A DNA stretch of 64,000 nucleotides from Octopus sinensis. Taxonomy: Eukaryota. The stretch lies in assembly GCF_006345805.1 (NCBI RefSeq), contig NW_021832599.1, positions 1 through 64,000 on the forward strand, written 5' to 3'. The notes below the pieces were generated by a model. It ran no database searches. It was not told the origin of the DNA and saw nothing but the letters and a program-made list of their open reading frames with translations. Both the position numbers and the translations under genes were made by a program. Shown here piece after piece: positions 1,753 to 61,837 of the stretch; position 1 is the stretch's first letter, and every line of letters begins with the position of its first letter.

Positions 1753-4060
1753 AGGAGCAGTATGTAGTATGGATGTATGTATTTTTGTATGTATGTGTGT
1801 GGTTGTGTAGTATGTATGTATGTATGTATGTATGTATGTTGCAATGTATGGTAATGTATGTAGTATGTATGTATGTATGTATGTGTGTATGTAGTAATGT
1901 ATGTGTGTGTGTATTGATGTATGTAGTATGTATGTATGTATGTATTAATGTATGAATGTATGTATGTAGTGTAGTATGTATGTTTGTATGTCTGTTTGTG
2001 TATGTATGTATGTATGTTGTGTGTGTATGTATGTAGTATATGTATGTGTGTGTATGTGTTATGTATGTATGTATGTATTTATGTATGTATGTATGTATGT
2101 GTGTAGTATGTATGTTGTATGTATGTATATGTGTATGTATGTATGTAGTATGTATGTATGTGTGTTGTATGTATGTAGTATGCATGTATGTATGTATGTA
2201 TGTATGTATGTGTGTATGTATTTATGTATGTATGTATGTATGTATGTGTGTATGCATTATGTATGTGTGATGTATGTATGTATGTATGTGTGTATGTATG
2301 TATGTATGTAGTATGTGTTGTTGTAGTATTTGTATGTGTTATGTATGTATGTATGTATGTATGTATGTATGTATGTGTGTATGTATGTATGTATGTATGT
2401 TGTGTATTATGTATGTATGTTGTGTGTGTATGTATGTAGGTATGTAGTATGTATGTATGTATGTATGTATGTATGTATGTATGTATGTGTGTATGTATGT
2501 ATGTGTGTATGTATGTCTGTATGTATGTGTGTGCGTATGTATGTATGTATGTATGTGTGTATGTATGTATTGTGTATGTATGTATGTATGTATGTATGTG
2601 TGGTGTATGTATGTGTGTATGTATGTATGTATGTATGTATGTATGTGTGTGTATGTATGATGTGTATGTATGTATTTATGTGGTGTGTATGTTGTATGTA
2701 TGTATGTATGTATGTATGTATGTATGTGTGTATGTATGTATGTATGTATGTATGTATGTGTGTGTGTATGTATGTATTTATGTGTGTGTGTGTATGTATG
2801 TATGTATGAATGTATGTATGTATGTATGTATGTATGTGTGTATGTATGTACGATGCATGTATGTATGTATGTGTGTATGGTGTATGTATGTATGTGTGTG
2901 GTATGTATGTGTGTGTGTATGTATGTATTATGTATGTATGTATGTATATTGTGTGTATGTATGATGTGTTGTGTGTATGTATGTGTGTATGTATGTATGT
3001 ATTGTATGTATGTTGTATGTCTGTGTTTGTGTGTATGTATGTGTGTTGTATGTATGTATGTGTTTATGTATGTATGTATGTATGTATGTATGTAGTGTGT
3101 GTATGTATGTGTGTATGTATGTATGTATTGTGTCTGTATGTATGTATGTGGTTCTGTATGTATGTTGTATGTATGTATGTATGTTGTATGTGTGTGTGTG
3201 TATGTGTGTATGTATGTATGGTATGTATGTGTGTGCATGTATGTATGTATGTATGTATGTATGTATGTATGTATGTATGTGTGTATGTATGTATGTATGT
3301 AGTATGTATGTTGTAGTATGTATGTATGTTGTATGTATGTATGTATGTATATATTATGTATGTATGTATGTATTTGTATGTATGTGTATATGTATGGATG
3401 GATGTATGTGTGTATGTATGTCTGTATGTGTGTGTGTGTATGTGTGTATGTCTGTATGTATGTGTGTATGTATGTTATGTATGTATGTATGTGTGTGTGT
3501 GTATGTGGTATGTATGTATGTATGTATGTTATGTGTGTATGTATGTATGTATGTTAGTATGTATGTATGTATGTATGTGTTTATGTATGTATATATGTAT
3601 GACACTGTAGTATGTGTGTATGTACACATGTATGCTGTGTTAGGTCATGTATGTATGTAGTAGTTGTATGTATGTGTGGTGTGTGTAATTATGTGTGATG
3701 TATGTAGTAATGTTGTATGTATGTATGTATGTGTGTCTTTGTGTGTGTATGTATGTATGTATGTGTTTTGTATGTATGTGTATTATGTATGTATGTGTAT
3801 GTACGTACGTATGTATGTGTGTATGTTGTATGTATGTGTGGGTATGTTGTCTGTCGGTCTGTAGGATGTATGTGTGTATGTATGTATATATTATGTAGTT
3901 GTATGTAGTGTGTAGTATGTAGTCATGTGTGGTATGTATGTATGTAGGTATGTATGTATGTATGTATGTATGTACGTAGTGATGTACGTACGTATGATGT
4001 GTGTGTGTATTATTATGTACGTATGTATGTCTACGTATGTAGTGTGTGTGTGTGTATAGC
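1753..4060. repeat. ~2.3 kb degenerate (TATG)n/(TG)n microsatellite
   Basis: Continuous GTAT/GTGT units with indel variants; source of the [13 protein letters not shown] pseudo-ORFs. Confidence 0.95.
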
Positions 4061-8716: not shown

Positions 8717-9465
8717 AAACGTTAGCCCGCCGGGTGAAATGCGTAGCGGCATTTCGTCTAGCGTTACGTTCTGAGTTCAAATTCCGCCGAGGTCGACTTT
8801 GCCTTTCATCCTTTCGGGGTCGATTAAATAAGTACCAGTTACGCACTGGTGTCGATATAATCGACTTAATCCGTTTGTCTGTCCTTGTTTGTCCCCTCTA
8901 TGTTTAGCCCCTTGTGGGTAGAAAAGAAATAGGTATTTCGTCTGTCTTTGCGTTCTGAGTTCAAATTCCGCCGAGGTCCACTTTGCCTTTCATCCTTTCG
9001 GGGTCGATTAAATAAGTACCAGTTACGCACTGGTGTCGATATAATCGACTTAATCCATTTGTCTGTCCTTGTTTGTCCCCTCTATGTTTAGCCCCTTGTG
9101 GGTAGTAAAGAAATAGGTATTTCGTCTGTCTTTGCGTTCTGAGTTCAAATTCCGCCGAGGTCGACTTTGCCTTTCATCCTTTCGGGGTCGATTAAATAAG
9201 TACCAGTTACGCACTGGGGTCGATATAATCGACTTAATCCGTTTGTGTGTTCTTGTTTGTCCTTTCTGTATTTAGCCCCTTGTGGGTAATAAAGAAATAG
9301 GTATTTCGTCTGTCTTTGTGTTCTGAGTTCAAATTCCGCCGCGGTCCACTTTACCTTTCATCCTTTCGGGGGTCGATAAATTAAGTACCAGTTGCGTGCT
9401 GGGATCAATCTAATCGAGTGGCACCCTCCCCCAAAATTTCGGGCCTTGTACCTAGCGTAGTGAAG
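8717..9465 (+). mobile_element. tRNA-derived SINE family A, tandem tetramer of ~182-bp body units
   Basis: Partial head (aaacgttagc..gaaatgcgtagcgg), four units each with B-box gagttcaaattcc, last unit with a different 3' end; flanked by 11-bp TSD AATATTTTTAG (8706-8716 / 9466-9476). Confidence 0.9.
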
Positions 9466-10275
9466 AATATTTTTAGTTTTTCCGTGACATCTGAGTTACC
9501 TTAAATACTGTGCTTTTACATTGTTTGCTTCCGCGGATATACTCTACATCAATGGGAAGTTTTAAATTACTCGGTTTTTCAGCTGCTAGATATATTTTGA
9601 CAATGAAGTGAAAGTTCGCTTATTCATGTGTCTGAACGAATGCATATGTTGTTTAAATCGAACATTAAATGAGATCTTCGTAAAATATTTCCGCGCTATT
9701 CACATTTGAAACATCTGTTCTTTGTACAAGTTCCCTTTCAGAGCACTTATTGCCGTGTGAAAGTTCAATTGGTTCCGTTTCCGCAGTTGCTCAGCGTCCG
9801 GACATTGTTGACTTTGCGGAAACTATGTCGAATAGTTGGAATTGTGCGCAGGACGATTTCGGCAGTCAGTCAAGTTCACTTCTTCAAGTCCTGGGAAGCG
9901 AGATGGCGGTGGAGAAAGAATTACTGCGTTCCAGTAAATTTGCTGAAAGGTGTACGACAGCGGCATGAATGTTACTCTTCGCCGGAGAACACGGCTAGGA
10001 GAAAGATTTTACACTTGGTAGCCAGGATTTTTTTAAACTTCCTTGTTGGGTCTAGAGGAAGTAACGGGACTCATAACCGTTGCAGGCCCTCAAAGCCTGG
10101 TAAAATTGGTTCCGTTAACCTTTCGAGGTATTTTGTATTATACGTATTCCCACCCGTATACACGTTTGTACATTTACGTACACCTCCATATGTTTTGTAG
10201 CTTCTTTTGTAGGACATTATCTATGTAGCCCATGAGGGCATGTAGTAGTAGTGGTGGTAGTAGAAGTAGTAGTAG

Positions 10276-11184: not shown

Positions 11185-11730
11185 TAATGCGTTTCTTAGT
11201 TGGTGGAATTTGAACTCAGAACGTAGCGGCAGACGAAATACCTATTTTTATTCTTTATACACACAAGGGGCTAAACACAGAGGGGACAACAAGGACAGAC
11301 AAACGGGTTGAGTCGATTATATCGACCTCGGTGCGTAACTGTATTATTTAATCGACCCCGAAGGATGAAGGCAAAGTCGACCTCGGCGGAATTTGAACTC
11401 AGAACGTAGGGCGGAGACGAAGTACTATTTCTTTACTACCCACAAGGAGCTAAACACAGAGGGACAAACAAGGACGGACAAACGGGTTAGTCGATTATAT
11501 CGACCCCAGTGCGAAACTGGTACTTATTTAATCGACTCCCGAAAGGATGATGAGGCAACGTCGACCTCGGCGGAATTTGAACTCAGAACGTAGCGGCAGA
11601 CAAAATACCTGTTTCTTTACTACCCACAAGGGGCTAAACACAGAGGGGACAAACAAGGACGGACAAACGGGTTAGGTCGATTATATCGACTCCAGTGCGT
11701 AACTGGTACTTATTTAATCGACCCCGAAAG
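11185..11730 (-). mobile_element. SINE family A, three tandem units
   Basis: Three copies of ...ggaatttgaactcagaacgtagcggcagacgaaatac... at ~182-bp spacing. Confidence 0.85.
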
Positions 11731-16132: not shown

Positions 16133-16945
16133 CCGAAACGTTAGCACGCCGGGCGAAATGCTTAGCGGTATTTCTTTACTACCCACAAGGGGCTAAACAC
16201 AGAGGGGACGAACAAGGACAGACAAACGGATTAAGTTGATTATATCGACCCCAGTGCGTAACTGGTACTTATTTAATCGACCCCGAAAGGAAGAAAGCCA
16301 AAGTGGACCTCGGCGGAATTTGAACTCAGAACGTAACGGCAGACGAAATACCCATTTCTTTATTACCCACAAGGGGCTAAACATAGAGGGGACAAACAAG
16401 GACAGACATAGGTATTAAGTCGATTATATCGACCCCAGAGCGTAACTGGTACTTAATTTATCGACCCCGAAAGGATGAAAGGCAAAGTTGACCTCGGCGG
16501 AATTTGAACTCACAACGTAACGACAGACGAAATACCGCTAAGCATTTCAGCACGCCGGATGAAATGCTTAGCGGTATTTCGTCGTCGTTACGTTGTGAGT
16601 TCAAATTCCGCCGAGGTCAACTTTGCCTTTCATCCTTTCGGGGTCGATAAATTAAGTACCAGTTACGCACTGGGGTCGATATAATCGACTTAATACCTAT
16701 GTCTGTCCTTGTTTGTCCCCTCTATGTTTAGCCCCTTGTGGGTAATAAAGAAATGGGTATTTCGTCTGCCGTTACGTTCTGAGTTCAAATTCCGCCGAGG
16801 TCCACTTTGGCTTTCTTCCTTTCGGGGTCGATTAAATAAGTACCAGTTACGCACTGGGGTCGATATAATCAACTTAATCCGTTTGTCTGTCCTTGTTCGT
16901 CCCCTCTGTGTCTAGCCCCTTGTGGGTAGTAAAGAAATAGGTATT
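16133..16945. mobile_element. SINE family A fold-back: + head, inverted dimer, 12-nt loop, + dimer
   Basis: Arms ~16170-16547 and 16560-16945 are reverse complements with about 2 mismatches seen; centre gcatttc-agcacgccggat-gaaatgc. Confidence 0.9.
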
Positions 16946-17174
16946 ACTGATGATGATGATGACAACGATTAAGGTGTTGGTGGTGGTGGTGGATTTAGTG
17001 GTGGTCACGGTGGAGATGGTCGTGGTGTTTTAATGGATGGGCTTATAAAAGTGGAAGTGGCATTGGTGTGTATATGTGTTGTATGTATATGTGTGTCTGT
17101 TTGTGTATGCTCACTCAAATATGTTTGTATATATCAATATATACCTGTCTCTCTCTATATATATATAGTCATAT

Positions 17175-21164: not shown

Positions 21165-21927
21165 GGTACTTTTTGGTTATCTCACGCCCATTACAAAATT
21201 GGGTTATTTCACCCCGTTTTACGAGAAATATCGGTACTTTTGGTTATCTCCCCCAACAGAAAACTTGTTTAACCCTCAATAAAAAAAAAAAAACGAAAAT
21301 ATTGGCTGTGTGGTAACATGGTTCCGGGTTCAGTCCCACTGCGTGGCATCTTGGCAAGTGTCTTCTGCTATAGCCCCGGCCGACCAATGCCTTGTGAGTA
21401 GATTTGGTAGACGGAAACTGAAAGAAGCCTGTCGTATATGTATATAGATATATATAAGTGTGTGTGTATATGTTTGTCTGTCTGTGTTTGTCCCCTAGCA
21501 TTGCTTGACAACCGATGCTGGTGTGGTTACGTCCCCCCGTCACTTAGCGGTTCGGCAGAGAGAGTGATAGAATAAGTACTGGGCTTACAAAGAATAAGTC
21601 CCGGGTCGATTTGCTCGACTAAAGGCGGTGCTCCAGCATGGCCGCAGTCAATGACTGAAACAGTAAAAGAGTAAAAGAGTAAAAGAGAGAGTATGAAAAC
21701 TGACAAAAATTAAACATCTTACAGAATCTGATAGCATTTTTATAACAATTCATTCCATTCCTATTGAAGTGGCAAAAAGTCAACAATGTGTTGAAGTATT
21801 GAATCAAAAGGATCGAACTCTTTTAATCCAATCTCTTGTTGCAACATTAACTCATCATTTTAGTGGGGAGATAACCCAATTTTTAATGACAATTTTTTAA
21901 TGGGGGTGAGATAACCAAAAAGTACCA
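21165..21927. mobile_element. Inverted-repeat (MITE-like) element of unknown superfamily, interrupted by a SINE
   Basis: ggtactttttggttatctcac (twice, ~21165 and ~21234) inverted to gtgagataaccaaaaagtacc (~21907-21927); related gggagataacccaattt at ~21866. Confidence 0.45.
21301..21690 (+). mobile_element. SINE family B, near full length
   Basis: tggctgtgtggtaa head, ggttcagtccc B box, internal (TA/TG)n, (GTAAAAGA)n tail. Confidence 0.88.
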
Positions 21928-28705: not shown

Positions 28706-29121
28706 GGCGGCGAGCTGGCAGAAACGTTAGCGCGCCGGGCGAAATGCTTAGCGGTATTTCGTCTGCCGTTACGTTCTGAGTTCAAATTCCGCCGAGGTCG
28801 ACTTTGTCTTTCATCCTTTCAGGGTCGATAAATTAAGTACCAGTTACGCACTGGGATCGATATAATCGACTTAATCTGTTTGTCTGTCCTTGTTCGTCCC
28901 CTCTGTGTGTAGCCCCTTGTGGGTAGTAAAGAAATAGGTATTTCGTCTGCCGCTACGTTCTGAGTTCAAATTCCGCGGAGGTCGACTTTGCCTTTCATCC
29001 TTTCGGAGTCGATTAAATAAGTACCAGTTACGCACTGGGGTCGATGTAATCGACTTAATCCGTTTGTCTGTCCTGGTTTGTCTCCCTCTGTGTTTAGCCC
29101 CTTGTGGGTAATAAAGAAATA
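28706..29121 (+). mobile_element. SINE family A dimer with full head
   Basis: ggcggcgagctggcagaaacg head plus two units; 20-bp TSD GGTAATCTAGG(AA/GG)TTAACAA, 18/20 match. Confidence 0.9.
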
Positions 29122-29148
29122 GGTAATCTAGGGGTTAACAATAATAAC

Positions 29149-29373: not shown

Positions 29374-29802
29374 AACACTTCAGTACATTTACTAAGTTTC
29401 ACCCATGACACAAAACCGCACTGAAGTATATTACATTGCACCAAATATAGTTACATCTCACTGTACCACCGCATCACATCTCGCAAAACCGCACCACACC
29501 ATACGAAATTACACCACCACGCCGCCAATGAGGTAGCCTCCGTGGAGTTACTCAACCTGCTAGAAACAGTGACCCATAACTCCCTCAAATCACACTCTGC
29601 CTCGTATGTAAGGACAAGATGCATTAGATAATGTACTTACACATTCTCCTCAAAAGATAGGATGGTCACGGTTAGAACGCCTTCGCTCAAAGGTGTGCTC
29701 TTATAGGATTCACATGGAGCTAAACAACTCCCCACTCCAACGATGAACCTCTCTGCACTACACAACATTTTACTGGTATACTACAACACACTACACCCCT
29801 TA

Positions 29803-30215
29803 CCTATTTCTTTACTACCCACAAGGGGCTAAACATAGAGGGGACAAACAAGGACAGACAAACGGATTAAGTCGATTATATCGACCCCAGTGCGTAACTG
29901 GTACTTATTTAATCGACCCCGAAAGGATGAAAGGCAAAGTCGACCTCGGCGGAATTTGAACTCAGAACGTAGCGGCAGACGAAATACCTATTTCTTTATT
30001 ACCCACAAGGGGCTAAACACAGAGGGGACAAACAAGGACAGACATAGGTATTAAGTCGATTACATCGACCCCAGTGCGTAACTGGTACTTAATTTATCGA
30101 CCCCGAAAGGATGAAAGGCAAAGTCGACCTCGGTGGAATTTGAACTCAGAACGTAACGGCAGACGAAATACCGCTACGCATTTCGCCAGGCGTGCTAACG
30201 TTTCTGCCAACTCGC
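29803..30215 (-). mobile_element. SINE family A dimer with head
   Basis: Two units plus head ending ...tgccaactcgcc; flanked by (CCA)-rich DNA. Confidence 0.88.
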
Positions 30216-46679: not shown

Positions 46680-46904
46680 TTACTCTTTTACTCTTTTACT
46701 TGTTTCAGTCATTTGACTGTGGCCATGGTGGAGCACCGTCTTTACTCGAGCACATCGACCCCAGGACTTATTCTTTGTAAGCCTAGTACTTATTCTATCG
46801 GTCTCTTTTGCCGTACCGCTAAGTTGCAGCGACATAAACACACTAGCATCGGTTGTCAAGCGATGTTGTGGGGGACAAACACAGACACACAAATATATTC
46901 ACAC

Positions 46905-49034: not shown

Positions 49035-49401
49035 CAGTGCTTTTCAAACTTTTTGCTGGAAACATTCCACTGGCTCGGGGTCGATTTGCTCGACTAAAGG
49101 CGCTGCTCCAGCATGGCTGCAGTCAAATGACTGAAACAAATAAAAGAGTAAAAGAGAGAGAGAGTAAAGAGTATTTGAGCGAGGATTGAAAATGAGGCGT
49201 GGAAAGTCGTGTTTATGGCTTGGGTAACCCCTATGGCTCGGGGAACCCCTATGCAATAATTTAATAGTCTTATGCACACATATCTGCACAGGAGAATTAA
49301 AAATTACTGCCGATTTTAGCAGTTTTGTAACTTCTTGCGGAACCCCTAGACTGTACTGGCGGAACCCCAAGGTTCCGCGGAACCCTGGTTGAAAACCACT
49401 G
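49035..49401. mobile_element. hAT-type MITE carrying a SINE-B 3' fragment
   Basis: TIRs CAGTGCTTTTCAA / TTGAAAACCACTG; perfect 8-bp TSD CTCTACAG (49027-49034 / 49402-49409). Confidence 0.85.
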
Positions 49402-50416
49402 CTCTACAGTGAGACAATAAACGTCCGGTTTGAAACAAGATTTAATCTACATAGTCACATGAGGATCTACAGAAGTTAAATCTTTGTCTCAGAGGGATTG
49501 CTGACAATTACATACAAATACATAGGAAAACATGTATTCCGCCATATAAATATATATGAGCATAACATAAAAACGACACAAGCAAATAAAAATTGGGTAA
49601 TTGTAATTTGTCCATTGATAGGCAATTTTGATAAACCATAGTACTGTAAGGTCTCACATATATAAGTTAAAAACCCTCGATTAACAAGCGTTATCATACT
49701 ATGATGGGCGTAATCGGCTGGGCCGATCGGCATGGAACTTTGTAGGGGTATTCGGGGGGGGGGGTCTCTAGGGTGGTTTATATATAGGTTTAGTCTCCCC
49801 CTATTTTCAGAGAAATTTCATCAATTGAGGTAACTTTGGTACCCGGAGATAACTTTGGCAGAAGAAATAGGGTGGCCTATACCCTCCTAAAGGACATGCT
49901 TGACCTCCTCCTTCTACCCCTGTCTCTGTCCCACCAACACCCCTACCTGAGTAACACCAACAATTAATGCAAATTTGGCACCCGGAGGTAAGTTTTGTAA
50001 GAGGAATAGAGAGGCTTACCTTCTCCCGCAAAAATCAGTCCGATCTCCTCTTCCTCTCCCGCCTCGCCCCCACCCCACCCAACCTCTTCTCCCTCTATTG
50101 AGTAATATTGTCGAATGAAGTAACTTTGGCAACCTGGGCCTCCTACACTGAGTGTGAGAATTAGATCTCTCCTTTCGAACACATAAACAGTTTCGAAACA
50201 TTGTTTACAAAATAATAGCTGATCATTTGCGAAGGAGCGTGTCTACAGTCAACACTTTGGACTTTTGCTCTAGTAACTTTTCCTTACTATGTATCATACT
50301 ACGGTATATAAAACAGTGAATTACATAATATACGTTCATTATATTACACGTTAATTAAAATGCAACAAAAGATTCTTTTTTATGTTGCTCATTTATTATT
50401 TTATTCGTGTCAGATC

Positions 50417-53400
50417 ATGACACCAAAACTGAAGTCGTCAATCGGGAGAAAAACAAGAAATGCTGCTTCTGCCAGTAGGACTCGGTCGGACGAAGCGTAC
50501 AGGGAAGCCGAACAAGAAAGAGATACAGAAGCACGGGGTGCAAAGCGCCAAAATATAGAAGTGAGAGACTCTGAGCAACAAAGAAATACCTCAGCACATC
50601 GATCAAGTGGGCTAAATCTGGCTGTCAGAGATGCAGAACAAGACGAAAATACCGCAGCACGTCGATCAAGTGGGCTAAATCTGGCTGTCAGAGATGCAGA
50701 ACAAGACGAAAATACCGCAGCACGTCGATCAAGTGGGCTAAATCTGGCTGTCAGAGATGCAGAACAAGACGAAAATACCGCAGCACATCGATCAAGTGGG
50801 CTAAATCTGGCTGTCAGAGATGCAGAACAAGACGAAAATACCTCAGCACATCGATCAAGTGGGCTAAATCTGGCTGTCAGAGATGCAGAACAAGACGAAA
50901 ATACCGCAGCACGTCGATCAAGTGGGCTAATCTGGCTGTCAGAGATGCAGAACAAGACGAAAATACCGCAGCACATCGATCAAGTGGGCTAAATCTGGCT
51001 GTCAGACATGCAGAACAAGACGAAAATACCGCAGCACGTCGATCAAGTGGCTAAATCTGGCTGTCAGAGATGCAGAACAAGACGAAAATACCGCAGCACA
51101 TCGATCAAGTGGGCTAAATCTGGCTGTCAGAGATGCAGAACAAGACGAAAATACCGCAGCACGTCGATCAAGTGGGCTAAATCTGGCTGTCAGAGATGCA
51201 GAACAAGACGAAAATACCTCAGCACATCGATCAAGTGGGCTAAATCTGGCTGTCAGAGATGCAGAACAAGACGAAAATACCGCAGCACGTCGATCAAGTG
51301 GCTAAATCTGGCTGTCAGAGATGCAGAACAAGACGAAAATACCGCAGCACGTCGATCAAGTGGGCTAAATCTGGCTGTCAGACATGCAGAACAAGACGAA
51401 AATACCGCAGCACATCGATCAAGTGGGCTAAATCTGGCTGTCAGACATGCAGAACAAGACGAAAATACCGCAGCACGTCGATCAAGTGGGCTAAATCTGG
51501 CTGTCAGACATGCAGAACAAGACGAAAATACCGCAGCACGTCGATCAAGTGGGCTAAATCTGGCTGTCAGAGATGCAGAACAAGACGAAAATACCGCAGC
51601 ACGTCGATCAAGTGGGCTAAATCTGGCTGTCAGAGATGCAGAACAAGACGAAAATACCGCAGCACGTCGATCAAGTGGGCTAAATCTGGCTGTCAGAGAT
51701 GCAGAACAAGACGAAAATACCGCAGCACGTCGATCAAGTGGGCTAAATCTGGCTGTCAGAGATGCAGAACAAGACGAAAATACCGCAGCACGTCGATCAA
51801 GTGGGCTAAATCTGGCTGTCAGAGATGCAGAACAAGACGAAAATACCGCAGCACGTCGATCAAGTGGGCTAAATCTGGCTGTCAGAGATGCAGAACAAGA
51901 CGAAAATACCGCAGCACGTCGATCAAGTGGGCTAAATCTGGCTGTCAGAGATGCAGAACAAGACGAAAATACCGCAGCACGTCGATCAAGTGGGCTAAAT
52001 CTGGCTGTCAGAGATGCAGAACAAGACGAAAATACCGCAGCACATCGATCAAGTGGGCTAAATCTGGCTGTCAGAGATGCAGAACAAGACGAAAATACCG
52101 CAGCACGTCGATCAAGTGGGCTAAATCTGGCTGTCAGAGATGCAGAACAAGACGAAAATACCGCAGCACGTCGATCAAGTGGGCTAAATCTGGCTGTCAG
52201 AGATGCAGAACAAGACGAAAATACCGCAGCACATCGATCAAGTGGGCTAAATCTGGCTGTCAGAGATGCAGAACAAGACGAAAATACCGCAGCACGTCGA
52301 TCAAGTGGGCTAAATCTGGCTGTCAGAGATGCAGAACAAGACGAAAATACCGCAGCACATCGATCAAGTGGGCTAAATCTGGCTGTCAGAGATGCAGAAC
52401 AAGACGAAAATACCGCAGCACGTCGATCAAGTGGGCTAAATCTGGCTGTCAGACATGCAGAACAAGACGAAAATACCGCAGCACGTCGATCAAGTGGGCT
52501 AAATCTGGCTGTCAGACATGCAGAACAAGACGAAAATACCGCAGCACGTCGATCAAGTGGGCTAAATCTGGCTGTCAGAGATGCAGAACAAGACGAAAAT
52601 ACCGCAGCACATCGATCAAGTGGGCTAAATCTGGCTGTCAGAGATGCAGAACAAGACGAAAATACCGCAGCACGTCGATCAAGTGGGCTAAATCTGGCTG
52701 TCAGACATGCAGAACAGACGAAAATACCGCAGCACGTCGATCAAGTGGGCTAAATCTGGCTGTCAGAGATGCAGAACAAGACGAAAATACCGCAGCACGT
52801 CGATCAAGTGGGCTAAATCTGGCTGTCAGAGATGCAGAACAAGACGAAAATACCGCAGCACGTCGATCAAGTGGGCTAAATCTGGCTGTCAGAGATGCAG
52901 AACAGACGAAAATACCGCAGCACGTCGATCAAGTGGGCTAAATCTGGCTGTCAGAGATGCAGAACAAGACGAAAATACCGCAGCACGTCGATCAAGTGGG
53001 CTAAATCTGGCTGTCAGAGATGCAGAACAAGACGAAAATACCGCAGCACGTCGATCAAGTGGGCTAAATCTGGCTGTCAGAGATGCAGACAAGACGAAAA
53101 TACCGCAGCACGTCGATCAAGTGGGCTAAATCTGGCTGTCAGAGATGCAGAACAAGACGAAAATACCGCAGCACATCGATCAAGTGGGCTAAATCTGGCT
53201 GTCAGAGATGCAGAACAAGACGAAAATACCGCAGCACGTCGATCAAGTGGGCTAAATCTGGCTGTCAGAGATGCAGAACAAGACGAAAATACCGCAGCAC
53301 ATCGATCAAGTGGGCTAAATCTGGCTGTCAGAGATGCAGAACAAGACGAAAATACCGCAGCACGTCGATCAAGTGGGCTAAATCTGGCTGTCAGAGATGC

Positions 53401-54007
53401 AGAACAAGACGAAAATACCGCAGCACATCGATCAAGTGGGCTAAATCTGGCTGTCAGAGATGCAGAACAAGACGAAAATACCGCAGCACGTCGATCAAGT
53501 GGGCTAAATCTGGCTGTCAGACATGCAGAACAAGACGAAAATACCGCAGCACATCGATCAAGTGGGCTAAATCTGGCTGTCAGACATGCAGAACAAGACG
53601 AAAATACCGCAGCACGTCGATCAAGTGGGCTAAATCTGGCTGTCAGACATGCAGAACAAGACGAAAATACCGCAGCACGTCGATCAAGTGGGCTAAATCT
53701 GGCTGTCAGAGATGCAGAACAAGACGAAAATACCGCAGCACATCGATCAAGTGGGCTAAATCTGGCTGTCAGAGATGCAGAACAAGACGAAAATACCGCA
53801 GCACGTCGATCAAGTGGGCTAAATCTGGCTGTCAGAGATGCAGAACAAGACGAAAATACCGCAGCACGTCGATCAAGAAGTTCTCCTACAGTTAGAGCTA
53901 CCGAACAAACCTATAACACTCGAGCACGACCGCGAGGTAGGCCAGCTCAATCGAAGATTATGAGCTACAAAATATTTCCCTCGCCGATAGTGAAATCGAT
54001 GAAATGA
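50417..54007 (+). CDS. Helitron RepHel-derived N-terminal ORF with ~52 x 21-aa repeats and an AT-hook; six 1-nt frameshifts as assembled
   Basis: MTPKLKSSIGRKTRNAA..., repeat VRDAEQDENTAARRSSGLNLA, then RARPRGRP. Six single-base homopolymer deletions (~50927, 51048, 51300, 52715, 52903, 53088) restore the original frame; corrected length would be ~1198 aa. Confidence 0.6.
50585..53877 (+). repeat. 63-bp minisatellite, ~52 highly homogeneous copies, no spacers
   Basis: Unit gatgcagaacaagacgaaaataccgcagcacgtcgatcaagtgggctaaatctggctgtcaga; period 63 (e.g. 50630 to 50693); three recurrent SNP sites. Confidence 0.97.
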
Positions 54008-54025
54008 TCAGAGATTATAACTTAA

Positions 54026-54877
54026 TTGCAGTGCAAGATAGATTTTGACGAAAATAAGGTCCCAGTATCACACCGGTCTCACAGCTGTGGCAGTTTTGGA
54101 GATTATATATGCTCGCATTGCAAAGCGAAATACTGGCCTGCTGAACCAATTTCCCTGTGCTGTGAAAAAAAGAAAGTTGAAGTTGAGCCTATTCCAAATC
54201 TATCAGATGACTAGCACTATGACCCGGCAACGCTGGGTCATAGTTCTAGTGAATGCATATAAAGCTGCATGCGTGCACACATACACGCGAGTACTGTCCA
54301 AATCTCCGACCAATCACATACAGCTAGCTGGCATTCAAATGGCGTATCAAGTTTCGGGCATTTTGAGATGGGTTTTAGATAGAAAATTCAAAAAAAAAGT
54401 CACTTCTATTGATTTTTTATGGCTTTGCGGAGTGACTGGGGAAATGTAAAGATGTCCACGTCCACCCTTAGACAGTTTTGAATGACCATAGAAAGTGCGA
54501 GCCCTCTAACTGAAAAATTGTGGATTTGTATAAAGGACACGCACACAGACACACACAGAGACATTTTGCCGTTTATATATATAGAGATATTGAAATTATG
54601 GGCCGATGGCAGATTTATAACAAAAATTCGATCATACAACAAAACACTTGCATTTGCTTCAATTGAATGCAAAATTGATAGTTAGTCATGCGGATTTAAT
54701 CCAGCATTCAATATACAAGGTAAGGGCCAGACTCTGGATCGCGTCGGTGTGTTTCTATCCTCTCCGATGTTCATGTACGGTCAGCTGTATGTCGCAATGA
54801 GTAGGGCAACGGATTCAGCTAATTTGAAACTTAGTTGTGGACAAACGGAGAATATTGTTTACAAAGAGGTTTTGTAA
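54026..54877 (+). pseudogene. Helitron Zn-finger region (interrupted) fused in frame to the helicase C-terminus
   Basis: Same frame throughout: ...CCEKKKVEVEPIPNLSD[insert]EILKLWADGRFITKIRSYNKTLAFASIECKIDS*SCGFNPAFNIQGKGQTLDRVG...KEVL*; HUH Rep and helicase core are absent. Confidence 0.85.
54211..54585 (-). mobile_element. Mini-Helitron (375 bp) nested antisense in the large Helitron's Zn-finger coding region
   Basis: Minus strand TCTATATATATAAACGG ... GACCCAGCGTTGCCGGGTCATAGTGCTAG|T; removing it restores codons GAT GAG ATA TTG. Confidence 0.88.
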
Positions 54878-55018
54878 AGACAGTACCATGAATGTGTTAT
54901 GTAAATGTTTATATATTGTTCAATAAGGTACACTATATAGTTTGGCACTCTCAAATACAATGAATAAAAATAAGCACATTACAACTTAAAATGTCTCGAT
55001 TTGCATCCTGTCCTCGTC

Positions 55019-55119
55019 ACCCATCGTAGATGGGTAAGTTTGCTAGTCTAAGTAACTTTGCTAGTAAGTTTGCTAGTCTAAGTAACTTTGCTAGTAAGTT
55101 TGCTAGTCTAAGTAACTAG
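55019..55119 (+). terminator. Helitron 3' hairpin/CTAG followed by ~2.8 copies of a 30-bp unit
   Basis: Hairpin 55019-55035; unit taagtttgctagtctaagtaactttgctag; CTAG at 55043, 55061, 55073, 55091, 55103, 55116. Confidence 0.8.
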
Positions 55120-56542: not shown

Positions 56543-57404
56543 TATATGTTGTTGTCGCATTGCCACAAACATAAAGTCATAACCGGTTTAATCGATAGAG
56601 TGACTAACTATCAGAAGGTCGAACAGTAATATCTTACAAATAGCGATTTATTCCGCGGTTCTGATGCTGTTTTTTTTTTTTTGCGTCTTCAGATGAAAAG
56701 TCACGTTACTCTACTGGATCGTTAGATCAACATGAAATGCGTCATCAATAATGCGTGAAGAGCATGTCAGGCCGCCGGCACAGCTTAGCCCAGCAACTTG
56801 GAAATGACTTATCAGTAACAGGAAATGACTTATCAAAGAATCGAACTCGATGAGCAGATTCCGTTTGCCGAGCATTTACTACACATTTTCAGCATTTGCC
56901 AAAGTCTAACGCACTCAGTTGTGGCTAACTGATTAAACACAGGGATCATCAAAGCTACACAAGATTGACAATCCTATTGTTTTGAGAGTATCTGGGACTG
57001 CATTGTCCTTACTTTTATTTAGATTGTGTCGTGTGTTTTAAGGGAGATTTAGCCTCTATTTTCAGCATCGTCATTCGAAGCATGTGTTGTCCCAGCAGTA
57101 GTGAAGCCCTAAGTTTATATAAAACTTGCAGGCGCCTTTTTTAAACATTTTACTCCACAAAAATGAAAATCATGTCTTTTCATTATTTTGAGGTCTCCGA
57201 AAATTGCGACCCCTTAATATTTAAATTGCTTAAATCAGACCCTGTGTCCAACAATTTATTGTTGCACTGTCCCTTATTATTCAATAGTCTTTTATATCAA
57301 CATCACGCTTACCAATACCCCATCTTCATAAACATGAACTTTCTTACCCAACCCATAAACACGACTTTCCACGCCTCATTTTCAATCCTCGCTCAAATAC
57401 TCTT

Positions 57405-57660
57405 TACTCTCTCTTTTACTCTTTTACTTGTTTCAGTCATTTGACTGCAGCCATGCTGGAGCACCGCCTTTAGTCGAGCAAATCGACCCCGGGACTTATT
57501 CTTTGTAAGTCCAGTACTTATTCTATCGGTCTCTTTTGCCGAACCGCTAAGTGACGGGGACGTAAACACACCAGCATCGGTTGTCAAGCAATGCTAGGGG
57601 GACAAACACAGACACATAATCATATACACACACATACATATATACATACATATATATATA
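57405..57660 (-). mobile_element. SINE family B, 3' half
   Basis: (GTAAAAGA)n tail, ggcggtgctccagcatggc, internal (CA/TA)n. Confidence 0.85.
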
Positions 57661-58049: not shown

Positions 58050-58113
<64 letters not shown>

Positions 58114-58120
<7 letters not shown>

Positions 58121-61100
58121 GGCTTAGTAAAATAAATTACTTTGCCGCATACTGAACTCATTAGAAATAGCAGCTAAAAAACTTTTTTAAAGCTATTTCT
58201 AATACTTAAAGAAAATCTCTCTCATATATAGTGTTTGCTTAATTCAACTCACAAAAGTTTGGGGGTAAGGACATCGAAAAATCAAATGCTAAGGTTATTC
58301 GAGAACGTACGTTTCAAGATTAGTCAAAACAACATTTCTATCATCGGCTCAGAAATTCCTTGGTTTGGATTTGGAAACACTGAAAATAAGAACATACCCT
58401 TTCGAAGATCTGCTCCCAACTAACAGTGCCAACAAATTCAAATAAGCAAGCGAAGAATCTCTGTTCTCCCCTTTCCACCAGCGTGGGTTAAAATCATCAA
58501 ACACTATGCTTATTTCGGTAAAATCCGAAGCATTAATCAGAGGGAGATTAATTATAATTTCAACAATTGAGGGCAAAATTAATTAATTATTAATCAATTT
58601 CACCAAGTGTTCAGTATGCAAAGGACCATTCAAGGCGAATTCAAATTATTACATTATATAAAAGGGCTTAGTAAAATAAATTACTTTGCCGCATACTGAA
58701 CTCATTAGAAATAGCAGCTAAAAAACTTTTTTAAAGCTATTTCTAATACTTAAAGAAAATCTCTCTCATATATAGTGTTTGCTTAATTCAACTCACAAAA
58801 GTTTGGGGGTAAGGACATCGAAAAATCAAATGCTAAGGTTATTCGAGAACGCACGTTTCAAGATTAGTCAAAACAACATTTCTATCATCGGCTCAGAAAT
58901 TCCTTGTTTGGATTTGGAAACACTGAAAATAAGAACATACCCTTTCGAAGATCTGCTCCCAACTAACAGTGCCAACAAATTCAAATAAGCAAGCGAAGAA
59001 TCTCTGTTCTCCCCTTTCCACCAGCGTGGGTTAAAATCATCAAACACTATGCTTATTTCGGTAAAATCCGAAGCATTAATCAGAGGGAGATTAATTATAA
59101 TTTCAACAATTGAGGGCAAAATTAATTAATTATTAATCAATTTCACCAAGTGTTCAGTATGCAAAGGGACCATTCAAGGCGAATTCAAATTATTACATTA
59201 TATAAAAGGGCTTAGTAAAATAAATTACTTTGCCGCATACTGAACTCATTAGAAATAGCAGCTAAAAAACTTTTTTAAAGCTATTTCTAATACTTAAAGA
59301 AAATCTCTCTCATATATAGTGTTTGCTTAATTCAACTCACAAAAGTTTGGGGGTAAGGACATCGAAAAATCAAATGCTAAGGTTATTCGAGAACGTACGT
59401 TTCAAGATTAGTCAAAACAACATTTCTATCATCGGCTCAGAAATTCCTTGGTTTGGATTTGGAAACACTGAAAATAAGAACATACCCTTTCGAAGATCTG
59501 CTCCCAACTAACAGTGCCAACAAATTCAAATAAGCAAGCGAAGAATCTCTGTTCTCCCCTTTCCACCAGCGTGGGTTAAAATCATCAAACACTATGCTTG
59601 TTTCGGTAAAATCCGAAGCATTAATCAGAGGGAGATTAATTATAATTTCAACAATTGAGGGCAAAATTAATTAATTATTAATCAATTTCACCAAGTGTTC
59701 AGTATGCAAAGGGACCATTCAAGGCGAATTCAAATTATTACATTATATAAAAGGCTTAGTAAAATAAATTACTTTGCCGCATACTGAACTCATTAGAAAT
59801 AGCAGCTAAAAAATTTTTTAAAGCTATTTCTAATACTTAAAGAAAATCTCTCTCATATATAGTGTTTGCTTAATTCAACTCACAAAAGTTTGGGGGTAAG
59901 GACATCGAAAAATCAAATGCTAAGGTTATTCGAGAACGTACGTTTCAAGATTAGTCAAAACAACATTTCTATCATCGGCTCAGAAATTCCTTGGTTTGGA
60001 TTTGGAAACACTGAAAATAAGAACATACCCTTTCGAAGATCTGCTCCCAACTAACAGTGCCAACAAATTCAAATAAGCAAGCGAAGAATCTCTGTTCTCC
60101 CCTTTCCACCAGCGTGGGTTAAAATCATCAAACACTATGCTTATTTCGGTAAAATCCGAAGCATTAATCAGAGGGAGATTAATTATAATTTCAACAATTG
60201 AGGGCAAAATTAATTAATTATTAATCAATTTCACCAAGTGTTCAGTATGCAAAGGGACCATTCAAGGCGAATTCAAATTATTACATTATATAAAAGGGCT
60301 TAGTAAAATAAATTACTTTGCCGCATACTGAACTCATTAGAAATAGCAGCTAAAAAACTTTTTTAAAGCTATTTCTAATACTTAAAGAAAATCTCTCTCA
60401 TATATAGTGTTTGCTTAATTCAACTCACAAAAGTTTGGGGGTAAGGACATCGAAAAATCAAATGCTAAGGTTATTCGAGAACGTACGTTTCAAGATTAGT
60501 CAAAACAACATTTCTATCATCGGCTCAGAAATTCCTTGGTTTGGATTTGGAAACACTGAAAATAAGAACATACCCTTTCGAAGATCTGCTCCCAACTAAC
60601 AGTGCCAACAAATTCAAATAAGCAAGCGAAGAATCTCTGTTCTCCCCTTTCCACCAGCGTGGGTTAAAATCATCAAACACTATGCTTATTTCGGTAAAAT
60701 CCGAAGCATTAATCAGAGGGAGATTAATTATAATTTCAACAATTGAGGGCAAAATTAATTAATTATTAATCAATTTCACCACGCTGGTGGAAAGGGGAGA
60801 ACAGAGATTCTTCGCTTGCTTATTTGAATTTGTTGGCACTGTTAGTTGGGAGCAGATCTTCGAAAGGGTATGTTCTTATTTTCAGTGTTTCCAAATCCAA
60901 ACCAAGGAATTTCTGAGCCGATGATAGAAATGTTGTTTTGACTAATCTTGAAACGTACGTTCTCGAATAACCTTAGCATTTGATTTTTCGATGTCCTTAC
61001 CCCCAAACTTTTGTGAGTTGAATTAAGCAAACACTATATATGAGAGAGATTTTCTTTAAGTATTAGAAATAGCTTTAAAAAAGTTTTTTAGCTGCTATTT

Positions 61101-61797
61101 CTAATGAGTTCAGTATGCGGCAAAGTAATTTATTTTACTAAGCCCTTTTATATAATGTAATAATTTGAATTCGCCTTGAATGGTCCCTTTGCATACTGAA
61201 CACTTGGTGAAATTGATTAATAATTAATTAATTTTGCCCTCAATTGTTGAAATTATAATTAATCTCCCTCTGATTAATGCTTCGGATTTTACCGAAATAA
61301 GCATAGTGTTTGATGATTTTAACCCACGCTGGTGGAAAGGGGAGAACAGAGATTCTTCGCTTGCTTATTTGAATTTGTTGGCACTGTTAGTTGGGAGCAG
61401 ATCTTCGAAAGGGTATGTTCTTATTTTCAGTGTTTCCAAATCCAAACCAAGGAATTTCTGAGCCGATGATAGAAATGTTGTTTTGACTAATCTTGAAACG
61501 TACGTTCTCGAATAACCTTAGCATTTGATTTTTCGATGTCCTTACCCCCAAACTTTTGTGAGTTGAATTAAGCAAACACTATATATGAGAGAGATTTTCT
61601 TTAAGTATTAGAAATAGCTTTAAAAAAGTTTTTTAGCTGCTATTTCTAATGAGTTCAGTATGCGGCAAAGTAATTTATTTTACTAAGCCCTTTTATATAA
61701 TGTAATAATTTGAATTCGCCTTGAATGGTCCCTTTGCATACTGAACACTTGGTGAAATTGATTAATAATTAATTAATTTTGCCCTCAATTGTTGAAA
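58114..61797. repeat. 545-bp tandem array with an internal inversion, flanked by (TA)n
   Basis: Forward units at 58114, 58658, 59202, 59747, 60290 (last truncated at ~60780); then inverted partial, full and partial units to 61797; near-identical copies. Confidence 0.95.
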
Positions 61798-61837
61798 TAT
61801 ATATATATATATATATACATACATATATATACATAGA

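What the first reader, a model, noticed from the sequence alone, without database searches (positions are those of the whole stretch)
50417..54007. Helitron ORF inflated by ~52 copies of a 21-aa (three-heptad) repeat ending in an AT-hook
Seen: the 63-bp unit is in frame with a Helitron-type N-terminus. Older diverged units flank the homogeneous core (YREAEQERDTEARGAKRQNIE, VRDSEQQRNTSAHRSSGLNLA ... VRATEQTYNTRARPRGRP). Only three substitution sites recur (R/H, D/H, A/S) and none creates a stop. All six frame disruptions are 1-nt losses in AA/AAA/GGG runs and sum to zero shift. Established: Helitron RepHel N-termini often contain R/E-rich repeats, and PRGRP is the AT-hook core. Inference: the true allele may encode an uninterrupted ~1200-aa, mostly helical or coiled-coil protein with an AT-hook but no Rep or helicase activity. 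It could be a repressor or domesticated chromatin protein, or just a minisatellite expanding inside a dead element. A splice-acceptor-like sequence (ttttattcgtgtcag) sits just before the ATG.
Basis: partly seen in the sequence, partly recalled or inferred. Interest (0 to 1): 0.75.

Follow-up and report, generated by a model that had tools for sequence, protein, structure and literature searches.

The report
Minisatellite blow-up inside a dead Helitron
A 63-bp repeat that normally occurs 3-5 times at the start of an octopus Helitron transposase gene has expanded to 52 near-identical copies in one broken, non-autonomous copy; this is an ordinary repeat expansion, not a new chromatin protein.

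Summary
There are 52 head-to-tail 63-bp units at 50624-53893, in frame with an ATG at 50417. Three variant sites recur. Six units lack 1 nt in a short homopolymer, for a net shift of -6.

The host is a canonical Helitron, 49694-55046. It starts 5'-TC, ends with a hairpin plus CTAG, and sits between A and T. It is a dead deletion derivative: Rep and most of the helicase are missing, the junction is IQGK|GQTLDRVG, and two paralogues in Octopus vulgaris share that junction. A 377-bp Helitron is nested in its Zn-finger region. It also carries a TAG stop and a 7-bp deletion.

Five other copies, one of which still holds Helitron_like_N and PIF1 remnants, have only about 3-5 diverged units. The expansion is therefore private to this locus. 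It is also young: units differ at 1.3% of sites, against about 14% between copies.

The "AT-hook" PRGRP is specific to this copy. Four relatives read RLRA/RLRV there, and the text after it is out of frame. AlphaFold gave contradictory folds, so the coiled-coil idea is unsupported. Three of the six reading frames of the unit are open, so the long ORF is a by-product of a 3n period.

The six deletions look like long-read assembly errors. Low interest.

The parts
49694..55046 (+). The whole element: a non-autonomous, internally deleted canonical Helitron of 5,353 bp. It has the form A|TC...CTAG|T.
   Evidence: The 5' end TCATACTAT follows a host A, and homology begins at the same base in the window, L002 and L005. 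The 3' end CCCATCGTAGATGGGTAAGTTTGCTAG|T is shared by L001, L002 and L003, and the flanks diverge immediately after it.
49694..50416 (+). The 5' leader. It ends in a pyrimidine-rich stretch plus CAG (50399-50413) directly before ATC-ATG.
   Evidence: It is conserved in L001, L002 and L005. In L002 the O. vulgaris gene model P0002 splices an exon ending at 16960 onto position 66197, the ATC that follows this CAG.
50417..50623 (+). The RepHel start codon, 27 unique residues, then the old diverged units A (50498-50560) and B (50561-50623).
   Evidence: Translation. The same residues appear in P0001, P0002 and L005.
50624..53893 (+). The expanded array: 52 units of 63 bp (21 aa). Units 5, 7, 11, 34, 37 and 40 are 62 nt long.
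   Evidence: The unit-type string is aabcAbDbacAaeddaaaaaaabaababaddbaDaaAaaAbababaeddbaa. Multi-unit blocks recur in it: aedd twice, and babaddba against babaeddba.
53891..53946 (+). The last old unit E (VRATEQTYNTRARPRGRP). The AT-hook-like PRGRP lies at 53930-53944.
   Evidence: Other copies read RLRARQ (L002), RLRVTH (L001), RLRASQ (P0033) and *LRATQ (L005) at this point.
53947..54040 (+). A stretch read out of frame. A 7-bp deletion after 53946 and a 1-nt insertion at 54040 turn the ancestral ...QAQLQVEEDELQNISLADSEIDEMITDYNLIAVQD into AQSKIMSYKIFPSPIVKSMK* (TGA at 54005-54007).
   Evidence: DNA alignment with L001 and L002. P0033 and L002 read straight through in the ancestral frame.
54047..54210 (+). 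The Helitron N-terminal Zn-finger-like motif: DENKVPVSHRSHSCGSFGDYICSHCKAKYWPAEPISLCCEKKKVEVEPIPNLSDD.
   Evidence: 16 hits among 1.84 billion representatives, all Helitron-type N-termini. C29, C32 and C46 are invariant. The profile matches Helraiser 7lcc_A at E = 6.5e-14.
54211..54587 (-). A nested 377-bp non-autonomous Helitron of another family. It runs 5'-TCTCTATATATA ... hairpin ... GCTAG-3' and sits between A and T.
   Evidence: It is absent from L001, L002 and L005 at this position. A second copy in L002, with different flanks, starts and ends at the same bases. The hairpin folds at -12.9 kcal/mol, z = -6.2.
54588..54723 (+). The continuation of the RepHel N-terminal region (LKLWADGRFITKIRSYNKTLAFASIECKIDS*SCGFNPAFNIQGK), with a TAG stop at 54683-54685.
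   Evidence: It matches the F..NIRAYN..LA.AS.GC...GFNPTFKIQGK block of P0032, P0034, P0036, P0038 and P0040. L001 and L002 read TSS where the window has S*.
54718..54723 (.). The junction of the 2.8-kb internal deletion that removed Rep and most of the helicase. It has 6 nt of microhomology (aggtaa).
   Evidence: L005 6349-6499 aligns to window 54577-54723, and L005 9327-9642 aligns to window 54718-55044. The missing L005 segment holds Helitron_like_N (E = 1.5e-32) and PIF1 (E = 4.8e-54). L001 and L002 align straight across the junction.
54724..54877 (+). The remnant of the PIF1-type helicase C-terminus (GQTLDRVGVFLSSPMFMYGQLYVAMSRATDSANLKLSCGQTENIVYKEVL*).
   Evidence: There is a weak Herpes_Helicase match. 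It is 73-85% identical to the helicase C-termini P0003, P0004 and P0005.
54878..55046 (+). The 3' non-coding end, with the terminal hairpin ACCCATC-gta-GATGGGT (55019-55035) and CTAG (55043-55046).
   Evidence: The hairpin folds at -5.7 kcal/mol, z = -3.5. It is conserved in L001, L002 and L003 and in a Macrobrachium locus.

Best explanation
This is a dead, non-autonomous copy of an octopus Helitron. A short block of tandem 63-bp coding repeats, native to the transposase N-terminus, has expanded in it as a neutral minisatellite.

Shown:
- The autonomous-type relative has about 4 diverged 21-aa units (R-x-x-E-Q-x-x-x-T-x-A-R) between its start codon and the Zn-finger-like motif.
- A deletion derivative that lost Rep and most of the helicase amplified in the genome.
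- In this one copy the B/C-type unit rose to 52 nearly identical copies.

Inferred:
- The expansion happened by replication slippage and unequal exchange between pre-existing tandem units, long after insertion. Recurring multi-unit blocks of variants are the trace of this.
- The long open frame exists only because the period is a multiple of three and the unit has no stop in that frame.
- No protein function is needed or indicated.
- The six 1-nt gaps are most likely long-read homopolymer errors that could not be polished inside a perfect repeat.
For: **Helitron identity.** The 5'-TC and the 3' hairpin plus CTAG lie between A and T, and several copies share these boundaries. The N-terminal profile matches Helraiser at E = 6.5e-14.

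**A dead copy.**
- The 2.8-kb deletion junction is shared with L001 and L002, while L005 keeps Helitron_like_N and PIF1 remnants there.
- A Helitron is nested at 54211-54587.
- There is a TAG stop at 54683.
- A 7-bp deletion and a 1-nt insertion lie after the array.

**A private expansion.** The distance from the ATG anchor to the Zn-finger anchor is 3660 bp in the window. It is 523 bp in L001, 453 bp in L002 and 420 bp in L006. L005 has 4 units. TRF finds 2.4 copies at 84% identity in L001 and none in L002. A search of 5.8 billion proteins returned no protein containing the homogeneous unit.

**A young array.** Units differ at 1.3% of sites. The window differs from its paralogues at 12.6-14.7%.

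**No sign of selection on a protein.** All three variant sites are non-synonymous. Three of the six frames of the unit are stop-free.

**Error-like deletions.** There are six private homopolymer deletions and no private substitutions. The 544-bp array in the same window shows the same profile, with 4 deletions against 2 substitutions. The O. vulgaris reference was assembled from Nanopore plus 10x reads (PMC13282606).
Against: No reads, transcripts or population data could be examined, so expression and the true copy number are untested.

The six deletions fall into two groups, units 5-11 and 34-40. This has P of about 0.01 under uniform placement, though the statistic was chosen after seeing the data. 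It could reflect locally poor polishing or something else.

Only five other copies were inspected (L001, L002, L004, L005, L006), so other expanded copies could exist.

The window's own species and assembly are inferred from its paralogues. They were not given.
Confidence: 0.85

Rival explanations
1. The array is a coding exon in use. It would be transcribed from the Helitron's own 5' region, or spliced onto host exons through the CAG acceptor just before the ATG. It would yield a repeat protein of about 1,198 aa acting as a repressor or a domesticated or chimeric chromatin protein.
For: If the six deletions are errors, the ORF 50417-54007 is uninterrupted at 1,198 codons. The acceptor-like sequence is conserved in the family. 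An O. vulgaris gene model uses it to join host exons to the Helitron N-terminal exon in a paralogue (P0002).
Against: The copy keeps both transposon ends and is otherwise decayed. The C-terminal tail and PRGRP are out-of-frame or copy-specific text. All variation is non-synonymous. Two further frames of the unit, one on each strand, are also open. No annotated or predicted protein with the homogeneous unit exists among 5.8 billion sequences. No gene with this product is on record. The structure predictions contradict each other.
Confidence: 0.04
2. The array is real, but its length and internal detail are partly assembly artefacts. Copy number may be over- or under-called by a long-read assembler, and the six deletions are errors.
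For: The private deletions are confined to homopolymers. The nearby 544-bp array shows similar 1-nt length jitter, and a 100% complementary 855-nt inverted duplication lies close by. The reference for the closest species is based on Nanopore reads.
Against: The ordered, non-random pattern of five unit types with recurring multi-unit blocks is not what a collapsed or hallucinated consensus would give. The flanking old units anchor both ends in unique sequence.
Confidence: 0.1
3. The array matters as DNA rather than as protein. It could be a nascent satellite, a piRNA or heterochromatin source, or a structural chromatin element, as described for some Helitron-borne minisatellites.
For: Helitron-internal tandem repeats have given rise to satellites in Drosophila (DINE-TR1; PMC6947457). 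They have also given rise to functional periodic DNA in C. elegans (bioRxiv 10.64898/2026.08.08.743475).
Against: This is a single locus. The unit occurs nowhere else in the window or in about 220 kb of related loci. No test of chromatin state or small RNAs was possible.
Confidence: 0.04

Closest known systems
Canonical Helitron (HLE1) non-autonomous deletion derivatives
   Same: It has 5'-TC, a 3' hairpin plus CTAG, and an A|T target. The termini are shared with a longer copy that carries Rep and helicase remnants (L005). The internal deletion is shared by several dispersed copies. These are the features listed for HLE1 in PMC11417382.
   Different: It keeps the first ~260 codons and the last ~50 codons of RepHel, joined at a 6-nt microhomology. 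It then gained a 3.3-kb array and a nested Helitron.
Helitron-borne minisatellites and satellites (Drosophila DINE-TR1 central tandem repeats; C. elegans Helitron1/HelitronY1 35-bp minisatellite)
   Same: A tandem array inside a non-autonomous rolling-circle element, with copy number that varies between insertions.
   Different: Those arrays are described as internal tandem repeats or minisatellites of the element, and in C. elegans they are in the family consensus; that they are non-coding is my own knowledge. Here the seed is a coding 21-aa repeat of the transposase N-terminus, and the large expansion was seen at one locus only.
Helraiser (bat Helitron transposase, PDB 7lcc) N-terminal region
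   Same: An R/E/K/Q-rich leader is followed by the C..C...CC Zn-finger-like motif and then the F..NIR..N..FAFAS...F.I.G..YHR block. The profile match has E = 6.5e-14 over residues 36-234.
   Different: The alignment does not address periodicity, and I did not check the Helraiser leader for a 21-residue tandem period. The octopus family has 4-5 recognisable 21-aa units.
AT-hook (core P-R-G-R-P)
   Same: The string RPRGRP is present at 53927-53944.
   Different: It is not conserved in any of four relatives. It arose from three substitutions in this decayed copy, has no basic C-terminal flank, and sits at a frameshift. There was no Pfam hit.

Membership tests
Canonical Helitron (HLE1) | 5' terminus begins with TC | tested here: met
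   TCATACTAT starts at 49694. Homology to L002 and L005 starts exactly there, after a host A in all three.
Canonical Helitron (HLE1) | 3' terminus is a short hairpin followed by CTRR | tested here: met
   ACCCATCgtaGATGGGT lies at 55019-55035 and CTAG at 55043-55046. The DNA fold is -5.7 kcal/mol, z = -3.5. It is conserved in L001, L002 and L003.
Canonical Helitron (HLE1) | Insertion between A and T without target-site duplication | tested here: met
   The window has A49693|TC...CTAG|T55047. Every copy has T after CTAG and A before TC, and the flanks are unrelated.
Canonical Helitron (HLE1) | Autonomous members encode Rep (Helitron_like_N) and a PIF1-type helicase | tested here: not met
   This copy lacks both; only about 50 C-terminal helicase residues remain. 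The related copy L005 has remnants of Helitron_like_N (E = 1.5e-32) and PIF1 (E = 4.8e-54). The window copy is therefore a non-autonomous member.
Helitron RepHel N-terminal Zn-finger-like region | A C-x2-C ... CC motif followed by the NIR.YN..(F/L)A(F/L)(A/T)S block, homologous to Helraiser | tested here: met
   Cysteines are invariant in 12 sequences. The profile matches 7lcc_A at E = 6.5e-14.
AT-hook DNA-binding motif | An R-G-R-P core in a conserved, basic context | tested here: not met
   The core string is present, but relatives read RLRA/RLRV, and the tail is out of frame. Pfam gave no hit at E <= 10.
Coiled coil (heptad repeat) | Hydrophobic residues at the a/d positions and a consistent helical prediction | tested here: inconclusive
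   The a/d positions are V, A, E, A, S, L. AF2 predicts one helix for residues 7-152 of the N-terminus (pLDDT 89 in 2 of 5 models). It predicts an all-beta solenoid for 15 units (pLDDT 67 in 2 of 5 models).
TE-derived minisatellite | Head-to-tail units, much more alike than the age of the host element allows, with locus-specific copy number | tested here: met
   52 units differ at 1.3% of sites, against 12.6-14.7% between element copies. The other copies have 3-5 units.
Domesticated transposase gene | Loss of transposon termini, an intact ORF, and orthologues under purifying selection | tested here: not met
   Both termini are intact and the ORF is broken at several points. All array variation is non-synonymous. 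Orthology across species could not be tested.

The most novel reading that the evidence does not exclude
The expanded array, preceded by a conserved acceptor-like CAG that a gene model in a paralogue already uses, may act as a capturable terminal exon. Host or Helitron-driven transcripts would then make a highly repetitive protein of about 1,200 aa, born from a transposase leader. That would be a de novo repeat protein arising by minisatellite expansion.
Probability: 0.04. Interest if true: 0.5.

Novelty: new member of a known kind. Interest (0 to 1): 0.2.

Why it matters
The main value is as a caution. A long, clean-looking ORF with a recognisable N-terminus and a motif-like ending can be produced entirely by in-frame expansion of a stop-free 3n unit inside a dead transposon.

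It also documents three things:
- An octopus Helitron family whose transposase leader is built of 21-aa tandem units.
- That such coding repeats can seed minisatellites.
- That residual homopolymer deletions persist inside perfect repeats of long-read assemblies.

If the locus proves polymorphic, it would make a convenient VNTR marker.

Tried and rejected
- **Pfam on the N-terminus plus units and on the Zn-finger ORF.** It gave only sub-threshold noise.
- **Second word-based protein search with the Zn-finger plus helicase tail.** It returned only helicase C-termini. The exhaustive search was needed to find the N-terminal relatives.
- **An intron to explain the stop at VKSMK* that L001 shares.** I considered a donor at GAG|GTAGGC and an acceptor at ttgcag. 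I rejected this because L002 and P0033 read continuously in another frame, and the GT is unique to the window.
- **L003 (O. sinensis) as a possible autonomous parent.** It holds only a helicase C-terminal fragment.
- **P0032 (1,135 aa, the closest long relative) and the window's own 191-aa ORF.** Neither is on record as a gene, so no DNA context could be fetched.
- **The net-zero frameshifts as compensatory.** I rejected this because stop codons lie between the first and second deletion of each group.
- **A fold search of the models.** I did not run it, because a single helix or a low-confidence solenoid would give meaningless matches.
- **A 5' boundary at about 50100, as suggested by the rearranged L001.** L002 and L005 overruled it.
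Full report

Yes.
- Tandem Repeats Finder reports a single array at 50584-53877: period 63, 52.4 copies, 98% matches, no indels at its resolution, score 6343. This is by far the strongest array in the window.
- Cutting at the unit start gives 52 units from 50624 to 53893. 24 are identical to the consensus, which encodes VRDAEQDENTAARRSSGLNLA.
- Substitutions occur at only three positions: position 7 G>C (D>H), position 31 G>T (A>S) and position 38 G>A (R>H, a CpG site).
- Six units are 62 nt long: units 5, 7, 11, 34, 37 and 40. Each loss lies in an AA, AAA or GGG run, and the cumulative shift is -6.
- The frame of ATG 50417 passes through two older, diverged units (A at 50498-50560, B at 50561-50623) and then the array. 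It runs on into VRATEQTYNTRARPRGRP... and TGA at 54005-54007.
- The unit occurs nowhere else in the window.

As assembled, however, the frame meets stops: the first at 50990-50992 and three more in units 34-36.

**2. What carries the array?**

*The reading frame continues into a Helitron gene.* Downstream of the array the same frame continues into DENKVPVSHRSHSCGSFGDYICSHCKAKYWPAEPISLCCEKKKVEV (54047-54210). After a gap it resumes as FITKIRSYNKTLAFASIECKIDS.SCGFNPAFNIQGK and then runs directly into GQTLDRVGVFLSSPMFMYGQLYVAMSRA...NIVYKEVL*.
- An exhaustive search of 1.84 billion representative proteins with the 62-residue Zn-finger ORF found 16 hits, all N-termini of Helitron-type proteins.
- A profile of these matches the solved bat Helitron transposase Helraiser (7lcc_A, residues 36-234) at E = 6.5e-14.

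*Related copies.* The closest proteins, P0001, P0002, P0033 and P0035, are 'hypothetical predicted proteins' of Octopus vulgaris. I fetched their loci (L001, L002, L004, L005) and compared them with the window.

*Boundaries.*
- Homology to L002 and L005 begins exactly at TCATACTAT (49694), after a host A in all three copies.
- Homology to L001, L002 and L003 ends exactly at ...ACCCATCgtaGATGGGTAAGTTTGCTAG (55046), followed by T and then unrelated sequence.
- The terminal stem folds better than 199 of 200 shuffles.
- These are the defining features of a canonical Helitron (HLE1) as summarised in PMC11417382.

*Internal deletion.*
- L005 holds 2.8 kb between the positions that are adjacent in the window at 54718-54723.
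- Translated piecewise, that segment carries remnants of Helitron_like_N (E = 1.5e-32), PIF1 (E = 4.8e-54) and the Pif1 2B domain.
- The window, L001 and L002 all lack it and share the same junction, IQGK|GQTLDRVG, with 6 nt of microhomology.
- The window copy therefore belongs to a deletion derivative that amplified after losing Rep and most of the helicase.

*Further damage in the window copy.*
- A 377-bp element lies at 54211-54587. On the minus strand it starts TCTCTATATATA and ends with a strong hairpin plus GCTAG. It sits between A and T, and a second copy with the same ends and different flanks lies in L002. It is a Helitron nested in a Helitron.
- TAG at 54683-54685 replaces a serine codon of L001 and L002.
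- A 7-bp deletion lies after 53946 and a 1-nt insertion at 54040.

**3. The tail and the 'AT-hook'.**
- L002 and P0033 read continuously from the last unit into the Zn finger...VRAAEQIYNTRARLRASQAQLQVEEDELQNISIADSEIDEMITDYNLIAVQDNFDE..SHRSHSCG.
- In the window the 7-bp deletion throws this stretch out of frame. This produces AQSKIMSYKIFPSPIVKSMK*. The 1-nt insertion at 54040 happens to restore the original frame for the Zn finger.
- L001 has a different 1-nt deletion at nearly the same place, so its annotated protein P0001 ends with the same out-of-frame text.
- PRGRP itself corresponds to RLRAR (L002), RLRVT (L001), RLRAS (P0033) and *LRAT (L005).
- Three substitutions in this roughly 14%-diverged copy created the string. 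It is not a feature of the family.

**4. How unusual is the repeat number?**
- The family natively has a short block of 21-aa units with the pattern R-x-x-E-Q-x-x-x-T-x-A-R. L001 has A, B, C, D and E. L002 and L005 have four.
- The distance from an anchor at the ATG to an anchor in the Zn finger is 523 bp in L001, 453 bp in L002 and 420 bp in L006. L006 is a short contig from a public read set. The same distance is 3660 bp in the window.
- TRF sees 2.4 copies at 84% identity in L001 and nothing in L002.
- A search of 5.8 billion proteins with a query containing two homogeneous units returned only P0001 and P0002.
- Other Helitron N-termini also carry R/E/A-rich repeats upstream of the Zn finger (P0036, P0040, P0042, P0044, P0046), and Helraiser has an R/E/K/Q-rich leader.
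- Tens of units are not routine. The expansion is private to this locus among the copies examined.

**5. Age and mechanism.**
- The window copy differs from L001, L002 and L005 by 12.6-14.7%, a Jukes-Cantor distance of 0.069-0.082 per lineage. The array units differ from each other at 1.3% of sites, 0.0067 per lineage.
- A recent O. vulgaris repeat study equates a JC distance of 0.09 with about 25 My and places a Helitron burst there (PMC13282606). On that calibration the family amplified roughly 20 My ago, and the array was expanded or homogenised within roughly the last 2 My. This is a rough inference.
- The order of unit types (aabcAbDbacAaeddaaaaaaabaababaddbaDaaAaaAbababaeddbaa) contains recurring multi-unit blocks: aedd twice, and babaddba against babaeddba.
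- The rare S/H type repeats the state of the flanking old unit B.
- I infer expansion by slippage and unequal exchange among pre-existing tandem units. It was not observed.

**6. Is there evidence for a protein?**
- None was found.
- The unit is stop-free in two of three forward frames and one reverse frame, so any in-frame expansion gives long ORFs.
- All three polymorphic sites are non-synonymous.
- The structure predictions disagree. The N-terminus plus 4.4 units is modelled as one continuous helix, with pLDDT 89 in two of five models and 53-68 in the others. Fifteen pure units are modelled as a beta-solenoid, with pLDDT 65-67 in two models and below 31 in three. Single-sequence AlphaFold is unreliable on perfect repeats, and I draw no conclusion from it.
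- The a/d positions of a heptad reading would be V, A, E, A, S, L, which is weak.
The pyrimidine-rich CAG just before ATC-ATG is conserved. The O. vulgaris gene model P0002 uses it as the acceptor, joining an exon 49 kb upstream to the Helitron N-terminal exon. That shows a gene predictor accepts it. It does not show that the window copy is expressed.

**7. The six deletions.**
- They are private events on different unit backgrounds, all in short homopolymers. There is not one private substitution among the first 51 units.
- Real mutation would be expected to give more substitutions than indels (general knowledge, not tested here).
- The 544-bp array at 58076-60830 shows the same excess, with 4 single-base deletions against 2 substitutions.
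- The O. vulgaris reference was built from Nanopore and 10x reads.
This is inference, and the window's own assembly is not known to me.
- Their grouping (units 5, 7, 11 and 34, 37, 40) is tighter than random, with P of about 0.01 on a statistic chosen after the fact. It cannot be compensatory, because stops lie between them. Locally unpolished stretches are the simplest explanation.
- Even with all six restored, the element stays dead for the reasons in section 2.

**8. Verdict.**

This is a canonical, non-autonomous, decayed Helitron in an octopus genome, with a locus-specific and recent minisatellite expansion seeded by the transposase's own 21-aa leader repeats.
- The closest known phenomena are Helitron-borne tandem repeats and minisatellites in Drosophila and C. 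elegans. The difference here is that the seed is coding sequence.
- The 'AT-hook' and 'coiled-coil chromatin protein' readings are not supported.
- Interest is low.
- The residual novel possibility is an expressed repeat protein or captured exon. I put it at about 4%.

Noticed in passing
window 54211-54587 (minus strand); L002 ~54053-54440: A 377-bp non-autonomous Helitron of a different family is nested in the Zn-finger region of the main element. It runs 5'-TCTCTATATATA ... hairpin ACTATGACCC/GGGTCATAGT ... GCTAG-3' and sits between A and T. A second copy with the same ends is present in O. vulgaris.
   Followed up: yes
window 55034-55117: A 30-bp unit repeated 2.8 times at 100% identity starts inside the main Helitron's 3'-terminal 13-mer. 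GTAAGTTTGCTAG therefore occurs three times in a row, interleaved with TCTAAGTAACTTTGCTA. It could be slippage at the terminus or repeated termination. It is absent from the other copies.
   Followed up: partly
L007 9889-10340 and L008 9780-10430 (Macrobrachium nipponense CP062050): A freshwater prawn genome carries fragments of the same Helitron family. The helicase C-terminus is 83-85% identical in protein to the window, closer than the O. sinensis fragment at 73%. Nucleotide identity to octopus copies is 77-80% over 450-550 bp. In L008 the 31-nt 3' terminus is 97% identical. This is a candidate horizontal transfer between decapods and octopuses; contamination is not excluded.
   Followed up: partly
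window 58076-61800: A 544-bp tandem array of 5 units is followed by about 2 units in inverted orientation. The arms 59808-60662 and 60779-61633 are 100% complementary over 855 nt, with a 116-nt spacer. This is either a true palindrome or a long-read fold-back assembly artefact. The units differ mostly by single-base deletions.
   Followed up: partly
L002 10001-66442 (O. vulgaris gene model P0002): An annotated gene joins exons at 10001-10129 and around 16784-16960 to a terminal exon that is the Helitron N-terminus. The join uses the CAG directly before ATC-ATG as acceptor. This is a chimeric host-transposon gene model spanning 56 kb.
   Followed up: partly
window 8751-9393, 11205-11730, 16170-16945, 28753-29125, 29801-30172; L001 ~9580-9810: A 184-bp SINE-like unit occurs repeatedly as dimers or trimers in both orientations. 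One copy is inserted in the 5' leader of the Helitron copy in L001.
   Followed up: no
window 1760-4057: A very long (GTAT)n microsatellite of about 589 units at 79% matches. The window is generally dense in microsatellites.
   Followed up: no
window 49076-49227 and 57344-57491: Two copies of a short interspersed repeat, 95% identical, flank the Helitron in inverted orientation. Further copies lie at 21603-21679 and 46683-46762.
   Followed up: no
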